From Podarcis cretensis (Eukaryota): DNA of 64,000 bases. Position 1 is the stretch's first letter. Every line of letters begins with the position of its first letter. Below the pieces are notes generated by a model. It was given only the letters and a program-made list of their open reading frames with translations. It had not been told where the DNA came from and made no database searches. This document shows positions 19,210-61,937 of this stretch, piece by piece. Both the position numbers and the translations under genes were made by a program. The stretch lies in assembly GCA_951804945.1 (NCBI GenBank), contig OX638156.1, forward strand, positions 49,166,001 through 49,230,000, given 5' to 3'.

Positions 19210-20140
19210 AAAAAAATGTGATTTTTAAATGGATAGTATGATTGGTGAGTTTGGACCCATCATGTCAATGACATATTGGTCCACCATCTTTATTCAAATT
19301 GGTACCTGGCATCAGCCCATCACCCCCACCTTGCAGCCCATCACCCCCACCTTGGGAAACATTGTACTGAATTTGGTGATGATCTCTTGAGAGAAGACGA
19401 AACATAATGCCAAGAAATGGGCAAAGTCATGCCAAAGTCATATTTTGATCCACCATCTTGATTCAAAATGATGCCCAATGCTCACAAAGTCTGCAACCCT
19501 TACTTTGAGAACCCTCTGGCCTAGTTTGGTGATGATTTTCACCCCCTCCCATTGCAAGAATCTCCTGATCTCCTGTTTTCAGAAAGGAGGGGGCAGAAAC
19601 TGCTCTTCGCTTCTTCTGCTCCTGCCTGACTCTGTGGAGGTCTGTGTGTTATCTATGTAGAGATTAGATGGCTGAGTAAGAGCTGTAACACTCATTCAAG
19701 CCAGTAGCTCTTTAGTTTAGTTTGCAGTAGCTATTAGAAAATAAAGAAGTTATGCTTCACAGCTTTCTTCCGTGTTGTTCATATTCTGCTGAGTTTGGTG
19801 CTCACAATGGGCAGTTGTGGGTCCAGTGCACTTAGACCTGCTTTCCAGGAGTGGAAGGTCTCTGGAAGTGCTCCAGTCACCTAGCCCAGTCAGGGCAGAA
19901 GAAGTTGTTGAGCCCAGTCGTTGACATCGGCTCAAAGGTGTAATAACAGATATCTCAAGAGGCAGGCAAACCTATGCCAGAAAGGGCCCAGTTACATACC
20001 ATAGTCACAGTTTGGCCATCAATTCAAAATGGTGCCTGGCACCTAAACATTGAATAGACCCCCCCACCTCAGGACCCCTTGTGCTGCATTTGGCGATGAT
20101 ATCTTGAGAGGCACCCGAATGTATAGAGAACAAACTGACA
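19210..20140 (+). mobile_element. Fragmented repeat, possibly a non-autonomous Helitron
   Basis: Recurrent ccaccatctt..attcaaa and tttggtgatgat motifs (~19280, ~19450, ~20020) ending gaatgtatagagaacaaac. Includes a 21-bp tandem duplication at 19313-19354. Confidence 0.4.
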
Positions 20141-23690: not shown

Positions 23691-24118
23691 CATGTGCACA
23701 AACTTACTCTTCATTTTGATTTGGGGCTAAGCTGTGGAGGTACTGGCCAGAGACTAGAGAGCTATGTAGAGCATGGTATTCATTTTCCTATCCACTAAAG
23801 CCCCGCCCCCAAAACCCTATGGTTTATTTTCCTTTTCTTTCTGAGCCTTCTGTATCATGGTGAGAATGTAGTCAGGTTTTTTTCTTGTAATCCATCAGTC
23901 TAGGTCAGGGATGAGCACCTGTGGCCCTCCAGTCTATGTTGGACTTCAGCTCCTTTAATCCCTGACCATTATCCATGCTGGCTGGAGCTGATGGGAGCTA
24001 TAATCCAGCAAAATGTGAAGTCCACAGGTTGCCTGCTCCAGTCTACACAAAGAACAAGTTCAGCATCAAATACAGCTTCCACTGAAGAATTATCAGTGAG
24101 GTCCTCTAGTGAAGGCAC

Positions 24119-24663
24119 TGAGGAGATTTCACCCCTCCCATACCCAAGAATCTCCTGAGAATCTCCTGAGGTCTCTGCTGACTCTACAGAGAGGAGGAGC
24201 AATGTACTGCTCTCTACTTAATTAGTCAAGTGAGTGAATCTGTGTGTGAGAGAGAGTCAGTCAGTGTGTCGGGGAGAGAGTGCAAGAGACCGTGTTTATA
24301 GATAAGATTGCTGCTAAGAGCAGCTGCAGGCACTCAGAGTATAGCATTAATTTATGCTCAGAATATTTAGCTCTGTATATAGTTTGTATCATAGCTGTAG
24401 TTATAGAATAAAGGAGGATATTTTACAGAGCTGCTCTCCGAGTGGTTTATACTCTGCAAGACTCTGCAAAACGCTGCTGCGCAACGACTGTATAATTGAG
24501 ACAGTGAATCCGGTGCTCTCAGCTCCAAGCTGTGAGTCCACAGCACTGTGACCTGTTCCTGTGGGAAAGGAGGTCTCTGGCAGTGCTACCCAGCTCGCCT
24601 AGCCCAGTCGGGGCTGTAGTGCATGAGTCCAGTTGGTACACTGGCTCAAGGGTGATGCTGACA
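24119..24663 (+). repeat. 5' LTR (545 bp)
   Basis: TGAGGAGA...GCTGACA, direct repeat of 27907-28451 with 4 substitutions by eye. AATAAA at 24407-24412. Confidence 0.97.
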
Positions 24664-24665
24664 TC

Positions 24666-24679
24666 GGTTATGGGCCCAG
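24666..24679 (+). promoter_or_regulatory. Primer-binding site complementary to the anticodon arm of initiator tRNA-Met
   Basis: GGTTATGGGCCCAG is the reverse complement of CTGGGCCCATAACC in eukaryotic tRNA-iMet. It starts 2 nt after the LTR. Confidence 0.92.
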
Positions 24680-25007
24680 ACGTTGTTCCAGTCGTCTGAC
24701 CAGTTGTTGTTCCAGTCGTCCCAGTCGCCAGAGGTGTCTGTTGCTGATCGCTGGACGGCGGAACGGAGGCTGCATACTGGACTGATTTGTAGTGCCTAGA
24801 AGCAGAGCTGTGTTGAAGCAGAGTGTTCAAGCTGCCGCTGTTGCTGTTGCTGCTGCTTGAGGTATGTTGCTGACTGCCAAAGAAAGAAGATAGCATCCCT
24901 GTTTGCCTGTTAATTGCGCTCTGAGTGGGAGAGAGAGTGGCTGAAGAAGTCCAAGGCTTTATCTGTGTTTGCACGAGGGAAGTGTCTTGCTCTAAGTAAT
25001 AGCAGAC

Positions 25008-26243
25008 ATGGCCTGTGCACATTCTGGCCAGATGGCTCTATCCTTTCCCCTCCTCACGCCTGAAAACTATGCAGTTTGGCAAGTTAAGATGAAAGCGCTT
25101 TTACAGAGGGAAAAGCTATTTCACACGATAGAAGATGACCCTCCAGATAAAGATGATGATGATTGGGCTGAGTGGCATGCTGCAGATATGAAAGCCCGAG
25201 GGACAATTGTTTTGAGTGTTTCAGACCACTTGCTGGTGAACTTAGAGGGTCAAGAGACTGCACAAGCTGTTTGGCATAAGTTGAGAGATATGCATCTGAG
25301 ACAAAATGCTGGTTCCAGTGTGATTTTCTTCAAGAAGCTGTGCAGGTTACAGTTGGAGAAAGGTGGTGATTTGCCTAGCCATCTATCTCAGTTAAAGCGT
25401 CTCAGACAGGACCTTGTTCAGCGAGACCTGGCTATTTCAGAGGCTGTGTTTGCAATGCTGATGATAAATAGCCTAGATGATTATTACGATGGAGTAGCTG
25501 CCCAGATTTCTACAATGCCTGGTGACCGTCTAACAGAAGATTATGTGTCTAGCGTGCTCTTGAATGAGTGGGATCGCAGACAGGCTGTTAGAGAAAGCCG
25601 GGACTGTGCTGCTAAAAATGTGCTTGAAAATGTGCCTTCAGCAGGGGAAAGTGAAAGTGAAACTGCTGCTGTTAAAGCACTAAAGTTGAAGCGGTGCTTT
25701 TCATGTGGAGCACAAGGCCATTTGAGTTTCCAGTGCAAGAAATCTTCAAAGAAGAAGGGAAACTTCAGAGGCAGAGGGGGAGGAGGACGAAATCCCCAAG
25801 CACCTGCTACTTCCAAAGCCTTGATCTCTCGCTGCTCTAATCAACGTGGGCGGAGTTTCTTCGTGATCGACTCTGGCTGTTCCAACCACGTAGCCAAAGA
25901 TAAGGATCTCTTTGTTCAGCTTGAGAAGCAAGAGAAAGAAATTCATCAAGCAGATGGGACAGTTCTCACGAGTGAGGCTAAGGGAACTGTGTTCTTAAAG
26001 AGCCTGAATGCAACTATTAAGAATGTCCTGTATGCGCCTGATATTCAGGACAATTTGTTGAGTGTTTCCCAGCTTGATCATCAGGGTTTTAAGGTGGTGT
26101 TTGCTAAATCTCGCTGTGAAATTCGTCGAGATGGCAAGCTCATTCTATATGCAAAATGTGTAAATGGTCTGTATCAATTGCCTTTTGTTTCAGGTACAGG
26201 TACTGCAGAAGCAACTGAGAAAGAGTTGCAATTTGTCTATTGA
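25008..26243 (+). CDS. Copia Gag-protease ORF (411 aa)
   Basis: Copia Gag N-terminus (LLTPENYAVWQVKMKALL), zinc knuckle CFSCGAQGHLSFQC (CX2CX4HX4C), aspartic protease VIDSGCSNHV, and NVLYAP...NLLSVSQL. Confidence 0.95.
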   Translation: MACAHSGQMALSFPLLTPENYAVWQVKMKALLQREKLFHTIEDDPPDKDDDDWAEWHAADMKARGTIVLSVSDHLLVNLEGQETAQAVWHKLRDMHLRQNAGSSVIFFKKLCRLQLEKGGDLPSHLSQLKRLRQDLVQRDLAISEAVFAMLMINSLDDYYDGVAAQISTMPGDRLTEDYVSSVLLNEWDRRQAVRESRDCAAKNVLENVPSAGESESETAAVKALKLKRCFSCGAQGHLSFQCKKSSKKKGNFRGRGGGGRNPQAPATSKALISRCSNQRGRSFFVIDSGCSNHVAKDKDLFVQLEKQEKEIHQADGTVLTSEAKGTVFLKSLNATIKNVLYAPDIQDNLLSVSQLDHQGFKVVFAKSRCEIRRDGKLILYAKCVNGLYQLPFVSGTGTAEATEKELQFVY

Positions 26244-27537
26244 TAAGAATGAAAAGTTGCATGACCAATGTATTCATTATTACCATCGTGTTTATGGTCA
26301 TTTGAATTTCCAGGCTGTGGCAAAAATGCCTGATATGGTTCAGGGTATGAAGCTGAAAGAATGTCCCTACCACATGAAATGTGTTTCTTGTGCTGAGAGT
26401 AAGGCAAGGCAAGCTCCCAAAGGTACAGAGTCTGGGAGAGAGGCCAAGAAACCATACGAAGTCATTCATGCAAACTTAGTGGGGCCTCTAGCGCTCTCTA
26501 GAGGCAATTCAAGGTTTTTCATGGTTTTGATAGACTCCTACTCTAAATATGCATGGATCTATATACTACAGAAAAAGTCTGAAGCCTTTACCAAGTTTCG
26601 TCAGTTTTGTAAATGGCTCAGGAATGTACATAATGAGAATGTGCATTGTGTTTTCACTGACAGGGGTGGAGAGTTTTGTTCAGAAGAGTTTGAGGCTTTT
26701 CTTTCTGAACAGGGCATTGAGCATAGGACTGCCACGCCCAGATCGCCCTGGCAGAATGGTTTATGTGAGAGAATGAACCAGACCCTGCAGCAAGGAATCA
26801 GAACATTGTTACATGATTCGGGGCTGCCCAATCCTTTTTGGGCCGAAGCTCTTTCGTTTTTCTGTTACATGTATAACAGGAGGTACCAGTCTAGTGTAAA
26901 TTGCACCCCATATGAGATGCTTCACGGAAGGAAGCCATGTGTGAAGCACTTTAAAATTTTTGGTTCGGAGGTTTGGGTGCACACCTCGCAGGGTGACAAA
27001 CTGAGTAAGCGTGGAGAACATGGTGTTTTCCTAGGATATGAGAAAGGGTCTTATCGTGTCCTGATCACAGACACGAAAACCATAAGGCTGACCAGGAGTA
27101 TTGACGACAATCCACAATGGGACAGAGTTGGCGTTTTTCAGTGTCATCCCATTTGTGATGATGGTGCAAAAGGGGCAAAGAAAGTTAAGAGGGAGGCAAG
27201 TTCTGATGTGATTGATAATCCTGATGCCAATGTAGATCCAGATGATGGCACAGATTATCAGAGCCCAAAAGCCTCAGGTGAGTCTGACGCTGATTCAGAC
27301 TTAGCAGCTTCATATACTTTAGCTCCCCATTCTCCCAAAGAGGAGGAAGCACCAGAACAAGAGGATCAAAGAGTTTTGCGCAGATCTGAGAGAATGACCA
27401 AGGGGGTACCACCGAAAAGGTTTTCTGAAGAGTTTGCAAAGGCTGCGGTCACATGCAACTCTGGTGGGGTTTTTAAACCTAGCATGAAGTGTGCTGAGAG
27501 TAGTAGCACAAAACGCTTCATTGATTTCCTTACCTGA
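26164..27537 (+). CDS. Copia integrase ORF (457 aa), +1 frame relative to Gag-PR
   Basis: HRVYGH...CVSC zinc finger. Catalytic core HANLVGP / TDRGGEF / QNGLCERMNQTL. Also FWAEA, TPYEML, GVFLGY and the C-terminal RRSER...PPKRF motif. No RT domain follows. Confidence 0.93.
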   Translation: MVCINCLLFQVQVLQKQLRKSCNLSIDKNEKLHDQCIHYYHRVYGHLNFQAVAKMPDMVQGMKLKECPYHMKCVSCAESKARQAPKGTESGREAKKPYEVIHANLVGPLALSRGNSRFFMVLIDSYSKYAWIYILQKKSEAFTKFRQFCKWLRNVHNENVHCVFTDRGGEFCSEEFEAFLSEQGIEHRTATPRSPWQNGLCERMNQTLQQGIRTLLHDSGLPNPFWAEALSFFCYMYNRRYQSSVNCTPYEMLHGRKPCVKHFKIFGSEVWVHTSQGDKLSKRGEHGVFLGYEKGSYRVLITDTKTIRLTRSIDDNPQWDRVGVFQCHPICDDGAKGAKKVKREASSDVIDNPDANVDPDDGTDYQSPKASGESDADSDLAASYTLAPHSPKEEEAPEQEDQRVLRRSERMTKGVPPKRFSEEFAKAAVTCNSGGVFKPSMKCAESSSTKRFIDFLT

Positions 27538-27872
27538 TATTTGAAGCAAGCGTGTGTTTGTGTTTAAAGTGGTTTGTTCAAATCTGCCTAATTAGAAATG
27601 TAAATTTGTATTTGAGAGGAAGAAATGTGTATGAAGATTTTTCCAGAAGCTGCTTATTCATTTGTGTATTCACAGTGTGTATTTTGTGTAAACTACAGGT
27701 TGAGATTTATGTTTTAACTCTTTCCTAATAGACACAGAGAGGTTGTAGTAACTGTTTAATGATGTGATAAAGTGTCTTAGATAAGGGGGAGAAAGATACC
27801 TGCAAATATGTTACCAAGGTTGTAAGCAGAGAACAATTTTTGGAGTGTGTGTGCAAATTGCAGTTATGTTAA
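27538..27872 (+). pseudogene. Eroded RT/RNase H remnant
   Basis: VYEDFSRSCL at 27627-27656 (cf. copia RNase H IYEDNQSCI). ANM-(frameshift)-TKVVSREQFLECVCKLQLC* at 27802-27872 (cf. ADMLTKxL..F). Possible YLKQA at 27538-27552. Confidence 0.65.
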
Positions 27873-27892
27873 AGATTCTTGAATGGTCGGAT

Positions 27893-27906
27893 GAAATGGG
27901 GGAGGA
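27893..27906 (+). promoter_or_regulatory. Polypurine tract
   Basis: GAAATGGGGGAGGA immediately before the 3' LTR. Confidence 0.9.
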
Positions 27907-28451
27907 TGAGGAGATTTCACCCCTCCCATACCCAAGAATCTCCTGAGAATCTCCTGAGGTCTCTGCTGACTCTACAGAGAGGAGGAGCAATGTACTGCTC
28001 TCTACTTAATTAGTCAAGTGAGTGAATCTGTGTGTGAGAGAGAGTCAGTCAGTGTGTCAGAGAGAGAGTGCAAGAGATCGTGTTTATAGATAAGATTGCT
28101 GCTAAGAGCAGCTGCAGGCACTCAGAGTATAGCATTAATTTATGCTCAGAATATTTAGCTCTGTATATAGTTTGTATCATAGCTGTAGTTATAGAATAAA
28201 GGAGGATATTTTACAGAGCTGCTCTCCGAGTGGTTTATACTCTGCAAGACTCTGCAAAACGCTGCTGCGCAACGACTGTATAATTGAGACAGTGAATCCG
28301 GTGCTCTCAGCTCCAAGCTGTGAGTCCACAGCACTGTGACCTGTTCCTGTGGGAAAGGAGGTCTCTGGCAGTGCTACCCAGCTCGCCTAGCCCAGTCGGG
28401 GCTGTAGTGCATGAGTCCAGTTGGTACACTGGCTCAAGGGCGATGCTGACA
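27907..28451 (+). repeat. 3' LTR (545 bp)
   Basis: Near-identical copy of the 5' LTR. AATAAA at 28195-28200. Confidence 0.97.
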
Positions 28452-28768
28452 GGCACTACATGGGCCTGTTCTCTTTCTAGAATATCAGCAGATTTTAGAC
28501 AGACTTTCCTGCATTCCCATTGGTTGTTTCCTTGCATGGATGGATGTTGTCTATAGAATTCAACTGCATTTTGTGCTTTAGTTGTTAATTCTGATTGCAG
28601 TCAGAGAGAAAGCTAACATACTGGGGGATTTTTAGTTGTGAGAGAAGTCTGCCAAGCTCTGGTCTCCTTTAATTATCTTTGAGAGACAGCTGAGGTTTTA
28701 TATAATGATCCATGGTGTGATGGAAGTAGGGTTTTTTTCTCTATCTCTCTATAAATTGATTAAGAGTA

Positions 28769-32991: not shown

Positions 32992-34745
32992 GTAAGTACA
33001 ACTATTTTCAGTATTTTAACAAAAGATTCAAATTGAAGGGAGGGGGGAAATTGACTGAGATATTTTGATGTCTTCTCTTTGCCATGCCATCTGGAAGTGG
33101 TTAGTATGAGGCTTCTTGCTTGATGTGTTTGCATTGAATCAGGTTGGCAAGTTTCTTTTAGCAAAACTAGCTACAGAAAGAGTGCTGGTTATTATCAGGC
33201 TTTTCTTGGAACATACTGGAAGTGTAGGGAAAACTCAAATTATTGCAAGGTTGTTTGGAATTCAATAGTTTTTCAGGGATATGGTTTGCCTGCTTTAAAA
33301 TAAACAATGCAAGACGTCTGTCTAGAATAAAGCAGGACCTCTATGTTGCCTTGGCTGCCTCAGGCAAGCTAAAAATAACACGAGTTAGTGAATTGTTCAG
33401 CAATGCAAGTTAGCCAAGCAAACAAAGAGAATTCCCAGTTTCTGAAATGTTCCATTTTGTTTTTGCTATACAAACTACTACATCCACAATCCAAACATTT
33501 CCTTGCCTCTTGGACTTGCTAGTTGGAGTCCAAATCTAACAACACCGTAGCAAATCAAGTAAGAAATTTCTTTTCAGCATGAGCAAAGTTCAAGGGCTTT
33601 TGGATAAAAATGGTAGTCTGAGGGTTGATTTGTTCTATGGAACTTTGTACAAGAGTCCCAGAGCTGATAACAAAATGCACATGCATTGGTTCTATTAGAA
33701 ACAGTGCATGTATGTGTAATTTTTCCCTCTTTAGAAATGTGCATCAGCATGTGGGCTGATGCATTCTTGCTTACCACTGGAGCATGCGGCAAAGGAAAAG
33801 TCTGAGATTATGCATTTTGTATGCTGGAATCAGCACCAGAGTACAAAACATGTAAGCAGTTGCACTTCCGAAACATGCAAGACAAACAGGCTTACAAAAA
33901 GAAAAATTTGCAACAGCAGTAGGGAGAACAGGTAGACCATTCATGAGTTAGGTTAGGAGTGGGAACCTGTGGCCCTCCAGATATTGCTGGGTTACAACTC
34001 TCATTTGCCCTGACCAGCAGATCTAATGGTGAGGGGTGATTGGATTTGTAGTACAACAGCATCTGGAGGGCAATAGACTTAACTTGAGCATATGCAAGCG
34101 CTGGAATTTGCACTTTGAAAGCTATAGCAAAGATACCAACCTTGTATTTAACAACTTGCTCGGTTGCCATGGGCAACCAAGAATTTCATGCAGGCAAGTG
34201 AGCAAGCTGGCAGAAGAGGAGCATTCACTCCATCACTTTTCCATTAGCCCACTTGGTATCTGTGCTAGCTGTGGAAGAAAAGAAGTCATTTTCCTCCAAT
34301 AACCATCAGGGAAATGCAGCAGATTAATGTAGGGATGGATTGCTTTTTATCTTTTCTACTTGATGGAAGGCGTTAAAAAAAACAACCACCCGTTAACAGG
34401 CCAGTAGTTTGCATATACATGCTGCCCTCTCTTCCACAGCCAACATGGGACACACAGGGTACTAACCCCTAAGCAGGTTAGCATCCGCACTCCCAGATTA
34501 GTAACTTTGGGGAGCTAGTTTACAAGGCTGGATAATATTGCAATGCCAAATGGAAGTGTGCATTTTGGGGGTACATAGCATAATAGACCAGCTTAATACT
34601 TTAAAACTTCTTGAAAATCAAAACCAAAATGTATGTACATGCAGATATTACATGCCCCATGGTTGCTTAGCTTTGAAAGCAACTATTTAACAACCAAGGA
34701 ACAAACTTTTTGGGGGAGGGAGAGCTTTGTTTGAAACCTTCAAGT

Positions 34746-34881
34746 CAGGCTTCCTCAACCTCAGCCCTCCAGATGTTTTTGGCCTACAACTCCCATGATC
34801 CCTAGCTAGCAGGACCAGAGGTCAGGGATGCTGGAAATTGTAGTTTCAGAACATCTGGAGGGCCAAGGTTGAGGAAGTCTG
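34746..34881. mobile_element. Palindromic hAT MITE
   Basis: CAGGCTTCCTCAACCT...AGGTTGAGGAAGTCTG, core ccctccagatgtt...aacatctggaggg, 8-bp TSD cttcaagt/ctttaagt. Related copies near 14500, 16770, 23906, 31695, 33955, 35260, 48525, 49710, 58790 and 61040. Confidence 0.85.
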
Positions 34882-36404
34882 CTTTAAGTGCAGCTGAATT
34901 GCAGTCCAAGGTTTTCATTGCTATTATCAGTCTGGTTGTTTCGCTGTTATCTGTTGCTGCATTCAGACATGTCATTTGTTCAGATGATTTGTAGGTAGCA
35001 TTAGTTCCTTTCAGAAAGTGTTCATGATCAGTTAAAGATCCAGCCAAGGAGTAGGGCCCCTGCTTGTTTAAATGTAAGTTTATATAATTGCAAAGTTCAC
35101 TCTTAGTTGGGTAGCTGCAAACAATTTAAGAGGTACTTCTTTGCAATGGCTAGTTCCCTCCCCAATTTGCTTCCACGTCCTGCAGCACATCCAATATCCT
35201 GCCTACATGCTGTGTTTCGGGCCAGTCCTAATGAAAGATAGAATGCTACATTTTCTAGTCAGCCTTGGCTCCCCAGATTTTATTGGACCACAATCTGCAT
35301 CAGCCATAGCCAGCATGCCTAATGAACAGGGACGATAAGAATTGTAATCCAACAATATCTGGGGAACCATGCTTGGAAATCTGTTCTAGGTTATGGATTT
35401 GGTTACTGCATATGGACTTCCCTGTGATCCAGAACCGGAGGATATTGACTTCACTAGTAGAGTGTGAATTACAATACAATGCAAATTCAATATAGTTCCA
35501 GAATCAATAAAAATAAATGAAAACACCTAAATCATATGATTTCTAGCACCCACTGTTAGAAAAGAAATTAAGTTGGTTCAAATCTGTGAACGATGATGCT
35601 CTTTTCAGAGATCATCTGCTTCTCCTATGCTGAAAAGTTCTTACGCAATCAGTCTGCAACTCCATGAAATACTTGCCCACGATAAACATTCTTTGCCCTT
35701 TTGTCTACAGTCTGCTATTTCTGAAGTTGTCTTCTTTTTCCAGTTTAGTAGCAGTCCTTGAAGCTTAAGCTGCCTTTTATCTAATCCTTCCCAGTACACT
35801 GGTTTTCTTACTGCAGTTACTCTGTTGCTTGGAAGAGTGTTGCATGAGTCTTACTCTGAATTTTAGCTCTTCAGCTTCCTTTCTGCCCAGGCACTGAACT
35901 CTTCTCTACCTGTCCACTTAATTCTGAACCTTTGGATATTCAGTTCTTAGCTGCATGGCAATGAATTTATTTTTTGTGAGGGCTGTTCCTGTAGCATCAC
36001 TTTAATTCAAAATCAGCTGGAAAGGAGACCGGCTATATACAATCTTGACTTGACTGGTATCAGGAAAGATTTTGGATTTAAAAAATACTGTGAGTCATCT
36101 GATCCAATCAGATGTGATTTTAGACTTCTTTCTACTTTGAAATTACAACCAACAGGATAAGGTACTCTTCCAACCCACCCCTCTTCTTTACTGTCACCCT
36201 CTACACAGACTCAGGCTGCATCTAGTCAACCAGCCTGCCCATTCTTCCTCTCCTGGTGTGAAAAGTAATGCAATTCTAAGAATGTTTCTTGCTGAGAAAA
36301 AGTGAGCAGCATATGTAAGGACTTCATAATATTCCCGATAAAGTACCTAGATATTCAGAGCATGCTTGACCATTGCTTCTCACTAAGGGTACTGGGTTTC
36401 AGAT

Positions 36405-43165: not shown

Positions 43166-43518
43166 CAGGTGGCGCTGTGGGTAAAACCTCAGTGCCTAGG
43201 ACTTGCTGATCACATGGTCGGCGGTTCGAATCCCCGCGGCGGGGTGCACTCCCGTTGCTCGGTCCCAGCGCCTGCCAACCTAGCAGTTCAAAAGCATCCC
43301 CGGGTGCAAGTAGATAAATAGGGACCGCTTACTAGCGGGAAGGTAAACGGCGTTTCTGTGTGCTGCTCTGGCTCACCAGAGCAGCTTCGTCACGCTGGCC
43401 ACGTGACCCGGAAGTGTCTGCGGACAGCGCTGGCTCCCGGCCTATAGAGTGAGATGAGCGCACAACCCTAGAGTCTGTCAAGACTGGCCCTTATGGGCAG
43501 GGGTACCTTTACCTTTTT
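43166..43518 (+). mobile_element. Sauria SINE
   Basis: caggtggcgctgtgggtaaaacc...ggcggttcgaatccc...gggtacctttacc tail. TSD TACTGTGAG at 43157-43165 and 43519-43527. Confidence 0.92.
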
Positions 43519-55639: not shown

Positions 55640-56008
55640 GGGACACAGGTGGCGCTGTGGGTAAAAGCCTCAGCGCCTAGGACTTGCCGATCGAAAGGTC
55701 GGCGGTTCGAATCCCTGCGGCGGGGTGCGCTCCCGCTGCTCTGTCCCAGCGCCTGCCAACCTAGCAGTTCGAAAGCACCTCCGGGTGCAAGTAGATAAAT
55801 AGGGACCGCTTACCAGCGGGAAGGTAAACGGCGTTTCCGTGTGCGGCTCTGGCTCTGGCTCTGGCCAGAGCAGCGATGTCACGCTGGCCACGTGACCCGG
55901 AAGTGTCTCCGGACAGCGCTGGCCCCTGGCCTCTTAAGTGAGATGGGCGCACAACCCCAGAGTCTGTCAAGACTGGCCCGTACGGGCAGGGGTACCTTTA
56001 CCTTTACC
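55640..56008 (+). mobile_element. Sauria SINE (full length, young)
   Basis: gggacacaggtggcgctgtggg...(ACCTTT)n tail. TSD TATGTTATATATT at 55625-55637 and 56009-56021. Highly similar to the copy at 43166-43518. Confidence 0.93.
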
Positions 56009-60821: not shown

Positions 60822-61937
60822 GTAAGTCTCACGTTCCAAGTGTGGGATGAATAGACATTCCCAGCACCAGTGGAAACCAGTACAGTCCACAAAGCAGTAA
60901 CTGGAAAACAAGATGATTTGCTCCCCTGTTACAGAATATCAGTGATAAGTACTTTTGATTCTTCCCACAACTTCAGTGAAGCTTTGAAATGAGATGCACC
61001 TAAATGTAGTCTCTGTCCATATCGTCACATAATAGATGTGTCGGGAAGGTTTGGCCCACCATATGTTGTGGAACTACAACTCCCATTATCCTTGGCCATT
61101 GACCATGTTTTCTGGGACTGATGAGAGTTGTAGTTCAGCAACAATTAGAGAGCCATAAAGGAACTTTCCAAAATGGCTTACAAAGACATGGGCTAACGCT
61201 GTCTCTTATGGGTACTCCATACCTTTCGGTGTCTGTGAATTCATATAGAAGCAATATGACACAGAAAGGCAAGGCTTCCAGAACAGGTACCACAACCCGT
61301 TGTATGTTACCATAGTCCACAGAATAAAGCTCAGGCACCTCCCCACTAAGGTTATGAACCGGCTGGGTGGAGGTGTTGATTAGCAAGCATGCAAAGCAGC
61401 CTAAGCAGGTTTCTTCTATACGTACCTTTGGCTGAATGTCTGCTTGCTACTGTATATGCAAGGCCTGAACTGAGAGAGACAAAATATCCCTACAGCTTTC
61501 TCCCTAAATTACACACAGTAAAGTGTTGCCAAACTTTTCTCTCTGAATTCCACCTACATTAGTTAAGTACTTTGACCTTACAATTGCCTTGCCTTGAGCT
61601 CATTTTCTGACGGAGTGATATGAATGTGGTGCAAACATTTTTAAAAGCCAGGCCTTCACTGTGCTCCCTCTAAAAACACACACACCTCCATGATTCAGAG
61701 AAGAACTTGTTCTTCCTCCTCAAGTGGACTGTGGTAGCTTCTACGCTAACAAAAAGAGCTGACAGGCCAAGGTGACAAATAAGTGGACCAAAAAGCACCT
61801 CTCATCCTTGAATGGACTTAATCTGTAAGATCCCCCCAAGCCACCTGCCTTGGTAGTTTTAAAAGGGCCTTTTTATTTGTCCCTTGGGCATCCCCACACC
61901 ACCCAGTTCTTAAGGGCCTAGAAATGTCATTCTGCAG

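What the first reader, a model, noticed from the sequence alone, without database searches (positions are those of the whole stretch)
24119..28451. Young copia retrotransposon with no reverse transcriptase but long open Gag-protease and integrase frames
Seen: all cis signals are intact (TG..CA LTRs, PBS, PPT, 5-bp TSD) and the LTRs differ at only 4 of 545 sites. Only ~370 bp separate the integrase stop from the 3' LTR, where copia elements normally encode RT plus RNase H. That gap holds heavily eroded RNase H scraps (VYED..SCL; ANM/TKVVSREQF with an indel). Over ~2.5 kb, gag/PR/IN show no in-frame stops and one frame break. Inference: RT-RH decayed long before this copy inserted, so an RT-less lineage has kept replicating while retaining its own capsid, protease and integrase and borrowing RT in trans. 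This differs from LARD/TRIM elements (no coding capacity) and TR-GAG elements (Gag only), and points to a helper/dependent pair or a capsid-providing element in a vertebrate.
Basis: partly seen in the sequence, partly recalled or inferred. Interest (0 to 1): 0.85.

Follow-up and report, generated by a model that had tools for sequence, protein, structure and literature searches.

The report
Copia retrotransposon lineage lacking reverse transcriptase
This is a recently inserted copia-type jumping gene that lacks reverse transcriptase; its lineage has kept capsid, protease and integrase genes open while the leftover RNase H rotted, so it must be copied by an enzyme borrowed from a relative, and this copy is itself already broken.

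Summary
Window 24119-28451 is a 4,333-bp Ty1/copia element. It has 545-bp TG..CA LTRs differing at 4 sites, a GGCAC target duplication, a polypurine tract and a PBS matching the anticodon arm of initiator tRNA-Met. It encodes Gag-protease (25008-26222) and integrase (26224-27537) with no stop codon and one frame break.

There is no RT. About 393 residues are missing relative to the nearest RT-bearing relative (P0153, 68% identical). Window 27564-27869 is a real RNase H C-terminal remnant with 4 stops and 3 frame changes.

The deletion is not private. Four distinct 845-aa proteins from independent assemblies read Gag-PR-IN in one open frame. They end at the same truncated C-terminus and are 95% identical to the window copy.

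Relative-rate tests show Gag-PR-IN evolving as slowly as in the RT-bearing relative, while the RNase H remnant carries about 4-5 times more unique changes.

The best reading is a semi-autonomous, RT-less copia lineage mobilised in trans. The window copy is dead: it has the frame break and Asn in place of the first catalytic Asp of integrase.

No helper, copy number or dN/dS could be obtained, because no DNA of other copies was reachable. This is a new variant of a known kind, of moderate interest.

The parts
24114..24118 (+). 5' target-site duplication GGCAC
   Evidence: Identical 5-mer at 28452-28456.
24119..24663 (+). 5' LTR, 545 bp, TG..CA
   Evidence: 541/545 identical to the 3' LTR.
24666..24679 (+). 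Primer-binding site GGTTATGGGCCCAG, complementary to the anticodon arm (about nt 26-39) of initiator tRNA-Met
   Evidence: Window sequence compared by eye with the antisense tRNA-iMet oligonucleotides printed in PMC5648532 and PMC1797187.
24664..25007 (+). Untranslated leader
   Evidence: Lies between the LTR and the first ATG of the gag frame.
25008..26222 (+). Gag-protease reading frame. Gag domain about 25089-25586, zinc knuckle about 25692-25742, protease about 25860-26090 with DSG. The frame stays open to 26243.
   Evidence: Pfam Retrotran_gag_2 6e-23, zf-CCHC, Pol_BBD 8.5e-20. 96.6% (gag) and 94.6% (PR) identical to P0003.
26223..26223 (+). Frame break between protease and integrase, private to this copy
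   Evidence: Frame 0 matches the 845-aa relatives up to 26222 and frame +1 matches from 26224. The four relatives read straight through.
26224..27537 (+). Integrase reading frame (ORF from 26164). Zn-binding part about 26263-26403, catalytic core about 26449-26748, SH3-like domain about 26923-27102, acidic C-tail, stop at 27535-27537.
   Evidence: Pfam rve 7e-10, SH3_retrovirus 3.5e-15, gag_pre-integrs. 94% identical to P0003 406-845.
26473..26475 (+). Codon for Asn at the position of the first catalytic Asp of the integrase D,D,E triad
   Evidence: The window reads VIHANLVGP. P0003, P0184, P0185, P0186, P0153 and P0190 all read HADLVGP. The role of this residue rests on established knowledge of retroviral-type integrases.
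27520..27563 (+). Junction zone of the RT/RNase H deletion. About residues 852-1244 of P0153 have no counterpart, including the whole RVT_2 domain at 861-1103.
   Evidence: Homology to P0153 ends near its residue 851 and resumes at 1245.
27564..27869 (+). Eroded remnant of the RNase H C-terminus. Stops end at 27717, 27759, 27762 and 27780. Frame changes lie near 27655, 27678 and 27809.
   Evidence: Frameshift-aware alignment score 81 versus shuffles 29 +/- 5. 39/92 identical. Ends on the same LQLC-stop as P0153. No Pfam hit on the pieces.
27893..27906 (+). Polypurine tract GAAATGGGGGAGGA
   Evidence: Directly abuts the 3' LTR.
27907..28451 (+). 3' LTR, 545 bp
28452..28456 (+). 3' target-site duplication GGCAC

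Best explanation
The element belongs to a semi-autonomous Ty1/copia lineage. That lineage lost the reverse transcriptase and the N-terminal two thirds of RNase H through an internal deletion of about 1.2 kb, and went on transposing afterwards.

Shown: five independent sequences share the truncated Gag-PR-IN reading frame. The RNase H leftover is far more decayed than the LTR pair or the coding part. The element has intact ends, PBS, PPT and a target duplication, so it integrated after RT was lost.

Inferred: intact members translate one Gag-PR-IN polyprotein that builds particles, self-cleaves and integrates the cDNA. RT/RNase H would arrive in trans, most plausibly as the polyprotein of a related autonomous copia co-assembled into the same particles. 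Priming would use a 5' fragment of initiator tRNA-Met, as in Drosophila copia. The slow evolution of Gag-PR-IN implies that these proteins, or at least their translation, matter for the lineage's own propagation.

The window copy itself is a dead insertion. It has a frame break at 26223 and Asn at the first catalytic Asp of integrase. Its LTR divergence of 0.73% suggests an age of a few million years, if an assumed neutral rate of 1-2.5e-9 per site per year applies.
For: Structure and cis signals.

No RT: no RVT_2 hit in any frame piece. tblastn with P0153 finds gag-PR (65%) and IN (70%) but nothing for its residues 852-1244.

Shared truncation: P0003 is 845 aa, 94% identical over the integrase, and the match runs to its last residue. 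Its 90% cluster holds four 845-aa variants that differ at 2-5 residues, on contigs of 3,146-3,766 bp. These contigs are too short to hold RT-RH after the ORF. The 3,766-bp contig is close to the window's internal-plus-one-LTR unit of 3,788 bp.

Control: another copia cluster (P0160/P0187) mixes an 837-aa truncated form with a 1,430-aa RT-bearing form at 90% identity or more. The P0003 cluster does not.

Constraint: relative-rate tests give unique changes of 32 versus 37, and 34-49 versus 27-40, for Gag-PR-IN. For the RNase H remnant they give 10-17 versus 2-7. Lesion density differs with p = 1.2e-6. In a neutral simulation, a divergence of 0.1 per site already puts about 8 stops in 842 codons, and 0 of 300 runs were stop-free.

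Post-insertion decay: the window lineage has 16 polarised changes against 8 in the other RT-less copies. The excess matches the roughly 9 substitutions expected from the LTR divergence.
Against: No helper was identified. The nearest RT-bearing relative is only 68% identical and its source is unknown.

Copy number, other TSDs, LTR/PBS sharing with a partner and true dN/dS are therefore untested.

The recent divergence among RT-less copies (95.1% aa identity) falls no more often on variable sites than on conserved ones: 12 of 36 differences lie where the outgroup differs from both. It is compatible with neutrality: 13% of neutral runs at that divergence stay stop-free.

The contrast between the coding part and the remnant assumes that both share one history. 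Recombination could break that assumption.
Confidence: 0.72

Rival explanations
1. Recombinant origin. An old non-coding or decayed non-autonomous element supplied the 3' end (RNase H remnant plus LTR). It recently acquired a fresh gag-PR-IN segment from an autonomous copia by template switching between co-packaged RNAs. On this view the coding part looks conserved without any selection in the RT-less state.
For: The coding part and the remnant differ sharply in decay, which a chimera would also produce. Template-switch recombination among LTR retrotransposons is well documented (PMC6894440 listed; PMC11302176). A related LTR without coding sequence lies at 19530-19948.
Against: No RT-bearing protein closer than 68% was found in searches that accept lengths up to 1,479 aa, or any length. 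The same junction is shared by copies that are 5% diverged in protein, so the RT-less state has in any case persisted and spread.
Confidence: 0.12
2. The frames are kept open for RNA-level reasons, such as translation-coupled packaging or avoidance of decay of RNAs with early stops. Alternatively they are open simply because all sampled copies are young. On this view the Gag, protease and integrase proteins themselves are not needed.
For: Differences between the window copy and the 845-aa copies are spread almost evenly over domains and do not favour variable sites. A stop-free frame at this divergence occurs in 13% of neutral runs.
Against: Amino-acid change in Gag-PR-IN since the split from P0153 is no faster than in the RT-bearing lineage. 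All catalytic motifs (DSG, HHCC, D,D,E) are intact in the four 845-aa copies. That points to constraint on the proteins, not only on frame openness.
Confidence: 0.12
3. A one-off defective copy: a private deletion in a single insertion of an otherwise autonomous family.
For: Internal deletions are common in LTR elements. The window copy carries other private lesions.
Against: Four further sequences share the truncated end. The remnant is far more decayed than the 0.7% LTR divergence allows. The intact TSD, PBS and PPT show that the element transposed in this form.
Confidence: 0.03
4. Assembly artefact, or a host gene domesticated from a copia element.
For: None specific.
Against: Independent assemblies give the same ORF end. 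There are no N runs in the window. LTRs, TSD, several near-identical variants and a broken window copy do not fit a single-copy host gene.
Confidence: 0.01

Closest known systems
Semi-autonomous GAG-protease LTR retrotransposons of wheat (RLG_Sabrina_SA, RLG_WHAM; PMC9744471) and RLG_Quinta/RLG_Cereba (PMC11302176)
   Same: These are LTR elements that keep an intact ORF for some structural or processing proteins but lack RT. They persist for millions of years and are thought to be mobilised by an autonomous partner while contributing their own proteins.
   Different: They are Ty3/gypsy elements of plants, lack integrase as well, and have identified partners with shared PBS and LTR termini. Here the superfamily is copia, the host appears to be a lizard, integrase is retained, and no partner is known.
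TR-GAG, LARD and TRIM non-autonomous LTR elements
   Same: They have LTRs, PBS and PPT, lack RT, and depend on enzymes supplied in trans.
   Different: LARD and TRIM have no coding capacity. TR-GAG has Gag only. The recent sugar-beet survey describes a continuum that includes families with partly decayed POL domains (PMC13570524). Here an 845-codon Gag-PR-IN frame is intact in four copies.
BARE-2 of barley (cited in PMC13570524; details from my own knowledge)
   Same: A copia-type element that has lost one function and is complemented by a close autonomous relative.
   Different: BARE-2 lacks Gag expression and keeps Pol. This lineage is the reverse case: it keeps Gag and lacks RT.
Partly deleted endogenous retrovirus lineages of mouse (IAP I-delta-1, ETn/MusD; from my own knowledge, not checked here)
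   Same: Vertebrate LTR elements with internal deletions that remain highly mobile through trans-complementation.
   Different: They are retroviruses (Retroviridae) with different deletions. Their helpers are known and were tested experimentally.
Autonomous squamate Copia (Mtanga clade, PMC11889832; Repbase Copia-6 of Anolis and the corn-snake OCA2 insertion, PMC4657000) and Drosophila copia
   Same: Same superfamily, 5-bp TSD and gag-PR-IN order. The PBS is complementary to an internal part of initiator tRNA-Met, as I recall for Drosophila copia (Kikuchi et al. 1986, from memory).
   Different: Those elements carry RT and RNase H. Clade assignment in metazoan surveys rests on RT/RNase H, which this lineage lacks.

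Membership tests
Ty1/copia (Pseudoviridae) LTR retrotransposon | Copia-type Gag, aspartic protease and integrase in the order gag-PR-IN | tested here: met
   Pfam Retrotran_gag_2, Pol_BBD, gag_pre-integrs, rve and SH3_retrovirus, in that order.
Ty1/copia (Pseudoviridae) LTR retrotransposon | RVT_2-type reverse transcriptase and RNase H downstream of integrase | tested here: not met
   No RVT_2 in any frame. Only a decayed RNase H C-terminal remnant is left. The element descends from copia but is not an autonomous member.
Ty1/copia (Pseudoviridae) LTR retrotransposon | TG..CA LTRs, 5-bp target duplication, tRNA-iMet PBS, PPT | tested here: met
LARD / TRIM | No protein-coding capacity between the LTRs | tested here: not met
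   2.5 kb of Gag-PR-IN frame is present.
TR-GAG | A single ORF for Gag only, with no enzymes | tested here: not met
   Protease and integrase domains are present.
Semi-autonomous LTR retrotransposon (sense of PMC9744471) | A lineage-wide intact ORF for part of the protein set, with RT absent | tested here: met
   Four 845-aa intact Gag-PR-IN proteins share the truncated end.
Semi-autonomous LTR retrotransposon (sense of PMC9744471) | An autonomous partner with the same PBS and LTR termini (criteria quoted in PMC11302176) | not testable with these tools
   No DNA of P0153 or any other RT-bearing relative could be fetched.
Semi-autonomous LTR retrotransposon (sense of PMC9744471) | Many transposed copies with different target duplications | not testable with these tools
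   The source genome is not searchable here. Only one full copy lies in the window.
Metazoan Copia clade (for example Mtanga, PMC11889832) | Placement of the RT/RNase H domain in the clade tree | not testable with these tools
   The element has no RT, and no reference clade sequences were at hand.

The most novel reading that the evidence does not exclude
A vertebrate copia lineage has lived for a long time without its own reverse transcriptase, while selection keeps its Gag, protease and integrase working. That would be a division of labour. The RT-less element supplies its own particles and its own integrase, perhaps matched to its own LTR ends, and uses only the polymerase of an autonomous relative. 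It could compete with or regulate that relative. Such lineages would be invisible to RT-based surveys of animal Copia elements.
Probability: 0.3. Interest if true: 0.65.

Novelty: new variant of a known kind. Interest (0 to 1): 0.5.

Why it matters
Non-autonomous LTR elements that keep part of their coding capacity are documented mainly in plants, and mainly as Gag or Gag-protease forms. Here a copia lineage, apparently from a lizard, lacks only RT/RNase H and keeps an 845-codon Gag-PR-IN frame that evolves as slowly as in an RT-bearing relative. If that reflects selection, then integrase and Gag act preferentially on the RNA or cDNA of the element that encodes them, whereas RT can be shared. 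That makes the cis/trans rules of copia replication testable in a vertebrate.

In practice, surveys of metazoan Copia that detect and classify elements by RT/RNase H (PMC11889832) would miss such lineages. Squamate Copia content may therefore be undercounted.

Tried and rejected
A megablast of the element against the phage collection was irrelevant and found nothing.

The Gag-PR search restricted to 226-719 aa found only remote hits. The family's relatives are 845 aa or longer.

Scans of metagenome, viral and prokaryotic genome contigs with P0003 found no relative.

Pfam on six stop-free pieces of 27382-27910 gave nothing. The RNase H remnant was only recognisable against the family's own relative.

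A plain single-frame alignment of the remnant understated its identity (27%). A frameshift-aware alignment gives 42%.

One script that held typed alignment strings was not run. The step was redone by recomputing the alignment from the files in /data.

dN/dS could not be computed because only proteins of the other copies are available. Relative-rate tests and a neutral simulation were used instead.

A programmed frameshift at 26223 was considered and rejected, because the four relatives read straight through.

The antisense ORF at 24519-25022 and the other ORFs of 130 aa or more in the window have no Pfam match.

No tRNA gene and no Rfam family was found in the window.

The broken frame was read through only with X at the break, inside scripts.

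No spliced model was involved.

Full report
1. WHAT IS THERE

Window 24119-28451 is a complete LTR retrotransposon of 4,333 bp.

- The two LTRs (24119-24663 and 27907-28451) are each 545 bp. They begin TG, end CA and differ at four positions, all transitions.
- The pentamer GGCAC flanks both ends.
- A polypurine tract (27893-27906) abuts the 3' LTR.
- Two bases after the 5' LTR lies GGTTATGGGCCCAG (24666-24679). This is not complementary to the 3' end of a tRNA. It is complementary to the anticodon arm (about nt 26-39) of vertebrate initiator tRNA-Met, as that tRNA is printed in two papers. From memory, not checked here, this is the unusual priming arrangement described for Drosophila copia.
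- The window contains no N, no tRNA gene and no Rfam family.

2. CODING CONTENT

ORF 25008-26243 (411 aa) carries the copia-type Gag domain, a zinc knuckle and the Pol beta-barrel (protease) domain. ORF 26164-27537 (457 aa) carries the pre-integrase zinc-binding region, the rve catalytic core and the SH3-like domain. These are the two longest ORFs of the 64-kb window by a wide margin.

The two frames overlap and change register at 26223. There is no in-frame stop in 842 codons. No RVT_2 or RNase H family is detected in either ORF or in any stop-free piece of 27382-27910.

3. WHAT IS MISSING, AND WHAT THE 369-BP GAP IS

The nearest RT-bearing relative found is P0153, 1,338 aa, with RVT_2 at residues 861-1103. 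It aligns to the window's gag-PR at 65% and to integrase at 70%; the overall figure is 68%.

Homology stops near P0153 residue 851 and resumes at residue 1245. About 393 residues (1.2 kb) are therefore absent: the whole RT and the N-terminal, catalytic part of RNase H.

Window 27564-27869 is the leftover of the RNase H C-terminus. A protein-to-DNA alignment that allows frame changes scores 81, against 29 +/- 5 (maximum 51) for 100 shuffles. It has 39/92 identities, four stops and three frame changes, and ends on the same terminal LQLC followed by a stop.

4. THE TRUNCATION IS SHARED, NOT PRIVATE

An exhaustive HMMER search of 1.84 billion representative proteins with the integrase ORF gave one close hit. 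This is P0003, 845 aa, 94% identical, with the match running to its last residue. The next hit is only 36% identical.

P0003 is Gag-PR-IN in a single open frame and ends ..KRFIYFLT, where the window reads ..KRFIDFLT followed by a stop. Its 90% cluster holds four distinct proteins, all 845 aa, differing from one another at 2-5 residues. They sit on Logan contigs of 3,146-3,766 bp. After a 2,538-bp ORF these contigs have no room for the 1.46 kb that RT-RH occupies in P0153. The 3,766-bp contig is close to the window's internal-plus-one-LTR unit of 3,788 bp (this last point is inference from lengths only).

A different copia cluster serves as a control. It mixes an 837-aa truncated protein with a 1,430-aa RT-bearing one at 90% identity or more. 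That is the picture expected for sporadic damage in an autonomous family, and the P0003 cluster does not show it.

A search with P0003 that accepts 465-1,479 aa found no RT-bearing protein closer than P0153.

5. DIFFERENTIAL DECAY

With a Podarcis muralis copia-like protein (P0190, 48% identical to both) as outgroup, the RT-less P0003 and the RT-bearing P0153 have 32 and 37 unique changes. In the PR-IN core the counts are 20 and 21. Eight more distant outgroups give 34-49 against 27-40, and only one of the eight is nominally significant. Gag-PR-IN of the RT-less lineage has therefore changed about as slowly as that of an element that still needs all its proteins.

The RNase H remnant, tested the same way, has 10-17 unique changes against 2-7 in P0153, with p of 0.001-0.06 for seven of eight outgroups. 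Disabling lesions number 7 in 306 bp of remnant against 1 in 2,526 bp of coding sequence (p = 1.2e-6).

In a neutral simulation on the window's own coding DNA, a divergence of 0.1 per site already yields about 8 stops, and none of 300 runs stayed stop-free. The remnant's loss of identity (42%, against 68% for the rest) corresponds to roughly 0.1-0.25 substitutions per site. The LTR pair implies only about 0.004 per site since insertion. RT loss therefore long predates this insertion, and the coding part was protected over that interval. This holds provided the coding part and the remnant share one history.

6. LIMITS OF THE SELECTION ARGUMENT

Only proteins of the other copies are available, so dN/dS could not be computed. 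The window copy differs from the 845-aa group at 36 fixed residues plus a 2-residue in-frame indel; against P0003 itself identity is 95.1% (41 of 842 residues). These differences are spread evenly over domains. They fall on sites that also vary in P0153 no more often than chance predicts (12 of 36). At that divergence 13% of neutral runs stay stop-free.

The recent history alone therefore cannot show selection. A recombinant origin, meaning a fresh gag-PR-IN joined to an old 3' end, would also mimic the long-term contrast. I rate that rival at about 0.12.

7. STATE OF THIS COPY

Polarising with P0153 gives 16 changes on the window lineage against 8 on the lineage of the four intact copies. The excess is close to the roughly 9 substitutions expected after insertion from the LTR divergence.

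Two of the private changes are disabling. One is the frame break at 26223. The other is Asn (26473-26475) at the position of the first catalytic Asp of the integrase D,D,E triad. All relatives, including P0190, keep Asp there. The DSG protease motif, the HHCC motif and the other two triad residues are present. The window copy is thus a dead member of the lineage.

With an assumed squamate neutral rate of 1-2.5e-9 per site per year (my assumption, not a tool result), the LTR divergence of 0.73% dates the insertion to roughly 1.5-4 million years ago.

8. HOW IT MOST LIKELY WORKS

Shown: the lineage lacks RT yet produced at least this integrated copy with normal ends and a normal target duplication, and several intact relatives exist.

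Inferred: intact members make a Gag-PR-IN polyprotein. RT/RNase H must be supplied in trans, most plausibly as the full polyprotein of a related autonomous copia co-assembling through Gag. Reverse transcription would be primed from a 5' fragment of tRNA-iMet annealed at 24666-24679. The element's own integrase would insert the cDNA.

In copia the gene order is gag-PR-IN-RT-RH, so a single 3' internal deletion leaves exactly this set. The gypsy order leaves Gag-protease instead, as in the wheat semi-autonomous families. Why integrase stays constrained is unknown. Matching to the lineage's own LTR ends, or a role in particle assembly or nuclear import, are possibilities from general knowledge of Ty1.

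9. COMPARISON WITH WHAT IS KNOWN, AND NOVELTY

Partial-coding non-autonomous LTR elements are established in plants. Examples are TR-GAG, GAG-protease 'semi-autonomous' RLG_Sabrina_SA and RLG_WHAM, the Quinta/Cereba pair, and the continuum described in sugar beet.

Copia elements are known to be abundant in squamates, but surveys detect and classify them by RT/RNase H. Four full-text searches found no description of an RT-less copia lineage with an intact Gag-PR-IN frame in a vertebrate. That is absence from a limited search, not proof of absence.

I file the element as a descendant of Ty1/copia that fails the RT criterion of an autonomous member, and as a new variant of the semi-autonomous kind. 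The partner criterion for that kind could not be tested.

10. SOURCE ORGANISM AND SURROUNDINGS

The source was not determined.

The element sits among ordinary repeats: a palindromic repeat of about 100 bp, tRNA-derived SINE copies, and a related LTR at 19530-19948.

11. PROCEDURAL REMARKS

- Read-through of the broken frame used X at the break only.

Noticed in passing
window 19530-19948: A 419-bp LTR related to the element's LTR lies in the same orientation, 4.2 kb upstream. It has similar TG...CA termini and is 70-84% identical in the terminal parts. Its flanks (TTTGG and GATAT) do not match, and there is no gag or integrase similarity nearby. It is probably a solo or truncated LTR of a sister family.
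   Followed up: partly
window 24666-24679: The primer-binding site pairs with the anticodon arm of initiator tRNA-Met rather than its 3' end. This implies a half-tRNA primer, as I recall for Drosophila copia. The tRNA sequence was taken from oligonucleotides printed in two papers.
   Followed up: partly
window 43183-43516 and 55664-56005: Two copies, about 350 bp each and 90% identical, of a tRNA-derived SINE with a GGTTCGAATCC box B. They are ordinary interspersed repeats, not an LTR pair.
   Followed up: partly
window 33972-34071, 34764-34863, 35268-35367, 61054-61153, and about 23920-24030: A palindromic repeat of about 100 bp (GCCCTCCAGAT...ATCTGGAGGGC) occurs at least five times. One copy lies immediately 5' of the copia insertion. 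It looks MITE- or SINE-like.
   Followed up: no
P0190 and P0191 (database proteins): Two NCBI gene models carry copia gag, protease or integrase similarity: Podarcis muralis LOC144324910 (733 aa) and a Podarcis lilfordi 'vomeronasal type-2 receptor 26-like, partial'. They are probably transposon sequence annotated as host genes.
   Followed up: partly
window 24664-24860: The leader between the 5' LTR and gag holds short direct repeats (GTTGTTCCAGTCGTC twice, and a GCTGTTGCTG run). An antisense ORF of 167 aa (24519-25022) has no Pfam match.
   Followed up: no
P0160/P0187 cluster: Another, unrelated copia family has an 837-aa RT-less protein and a 1,430-aa RT-bearing protein in one 90% cluster. 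This shows what sporadic truncation inside an autonomous family looks like. It was used here as a control.
   Followed up: partly
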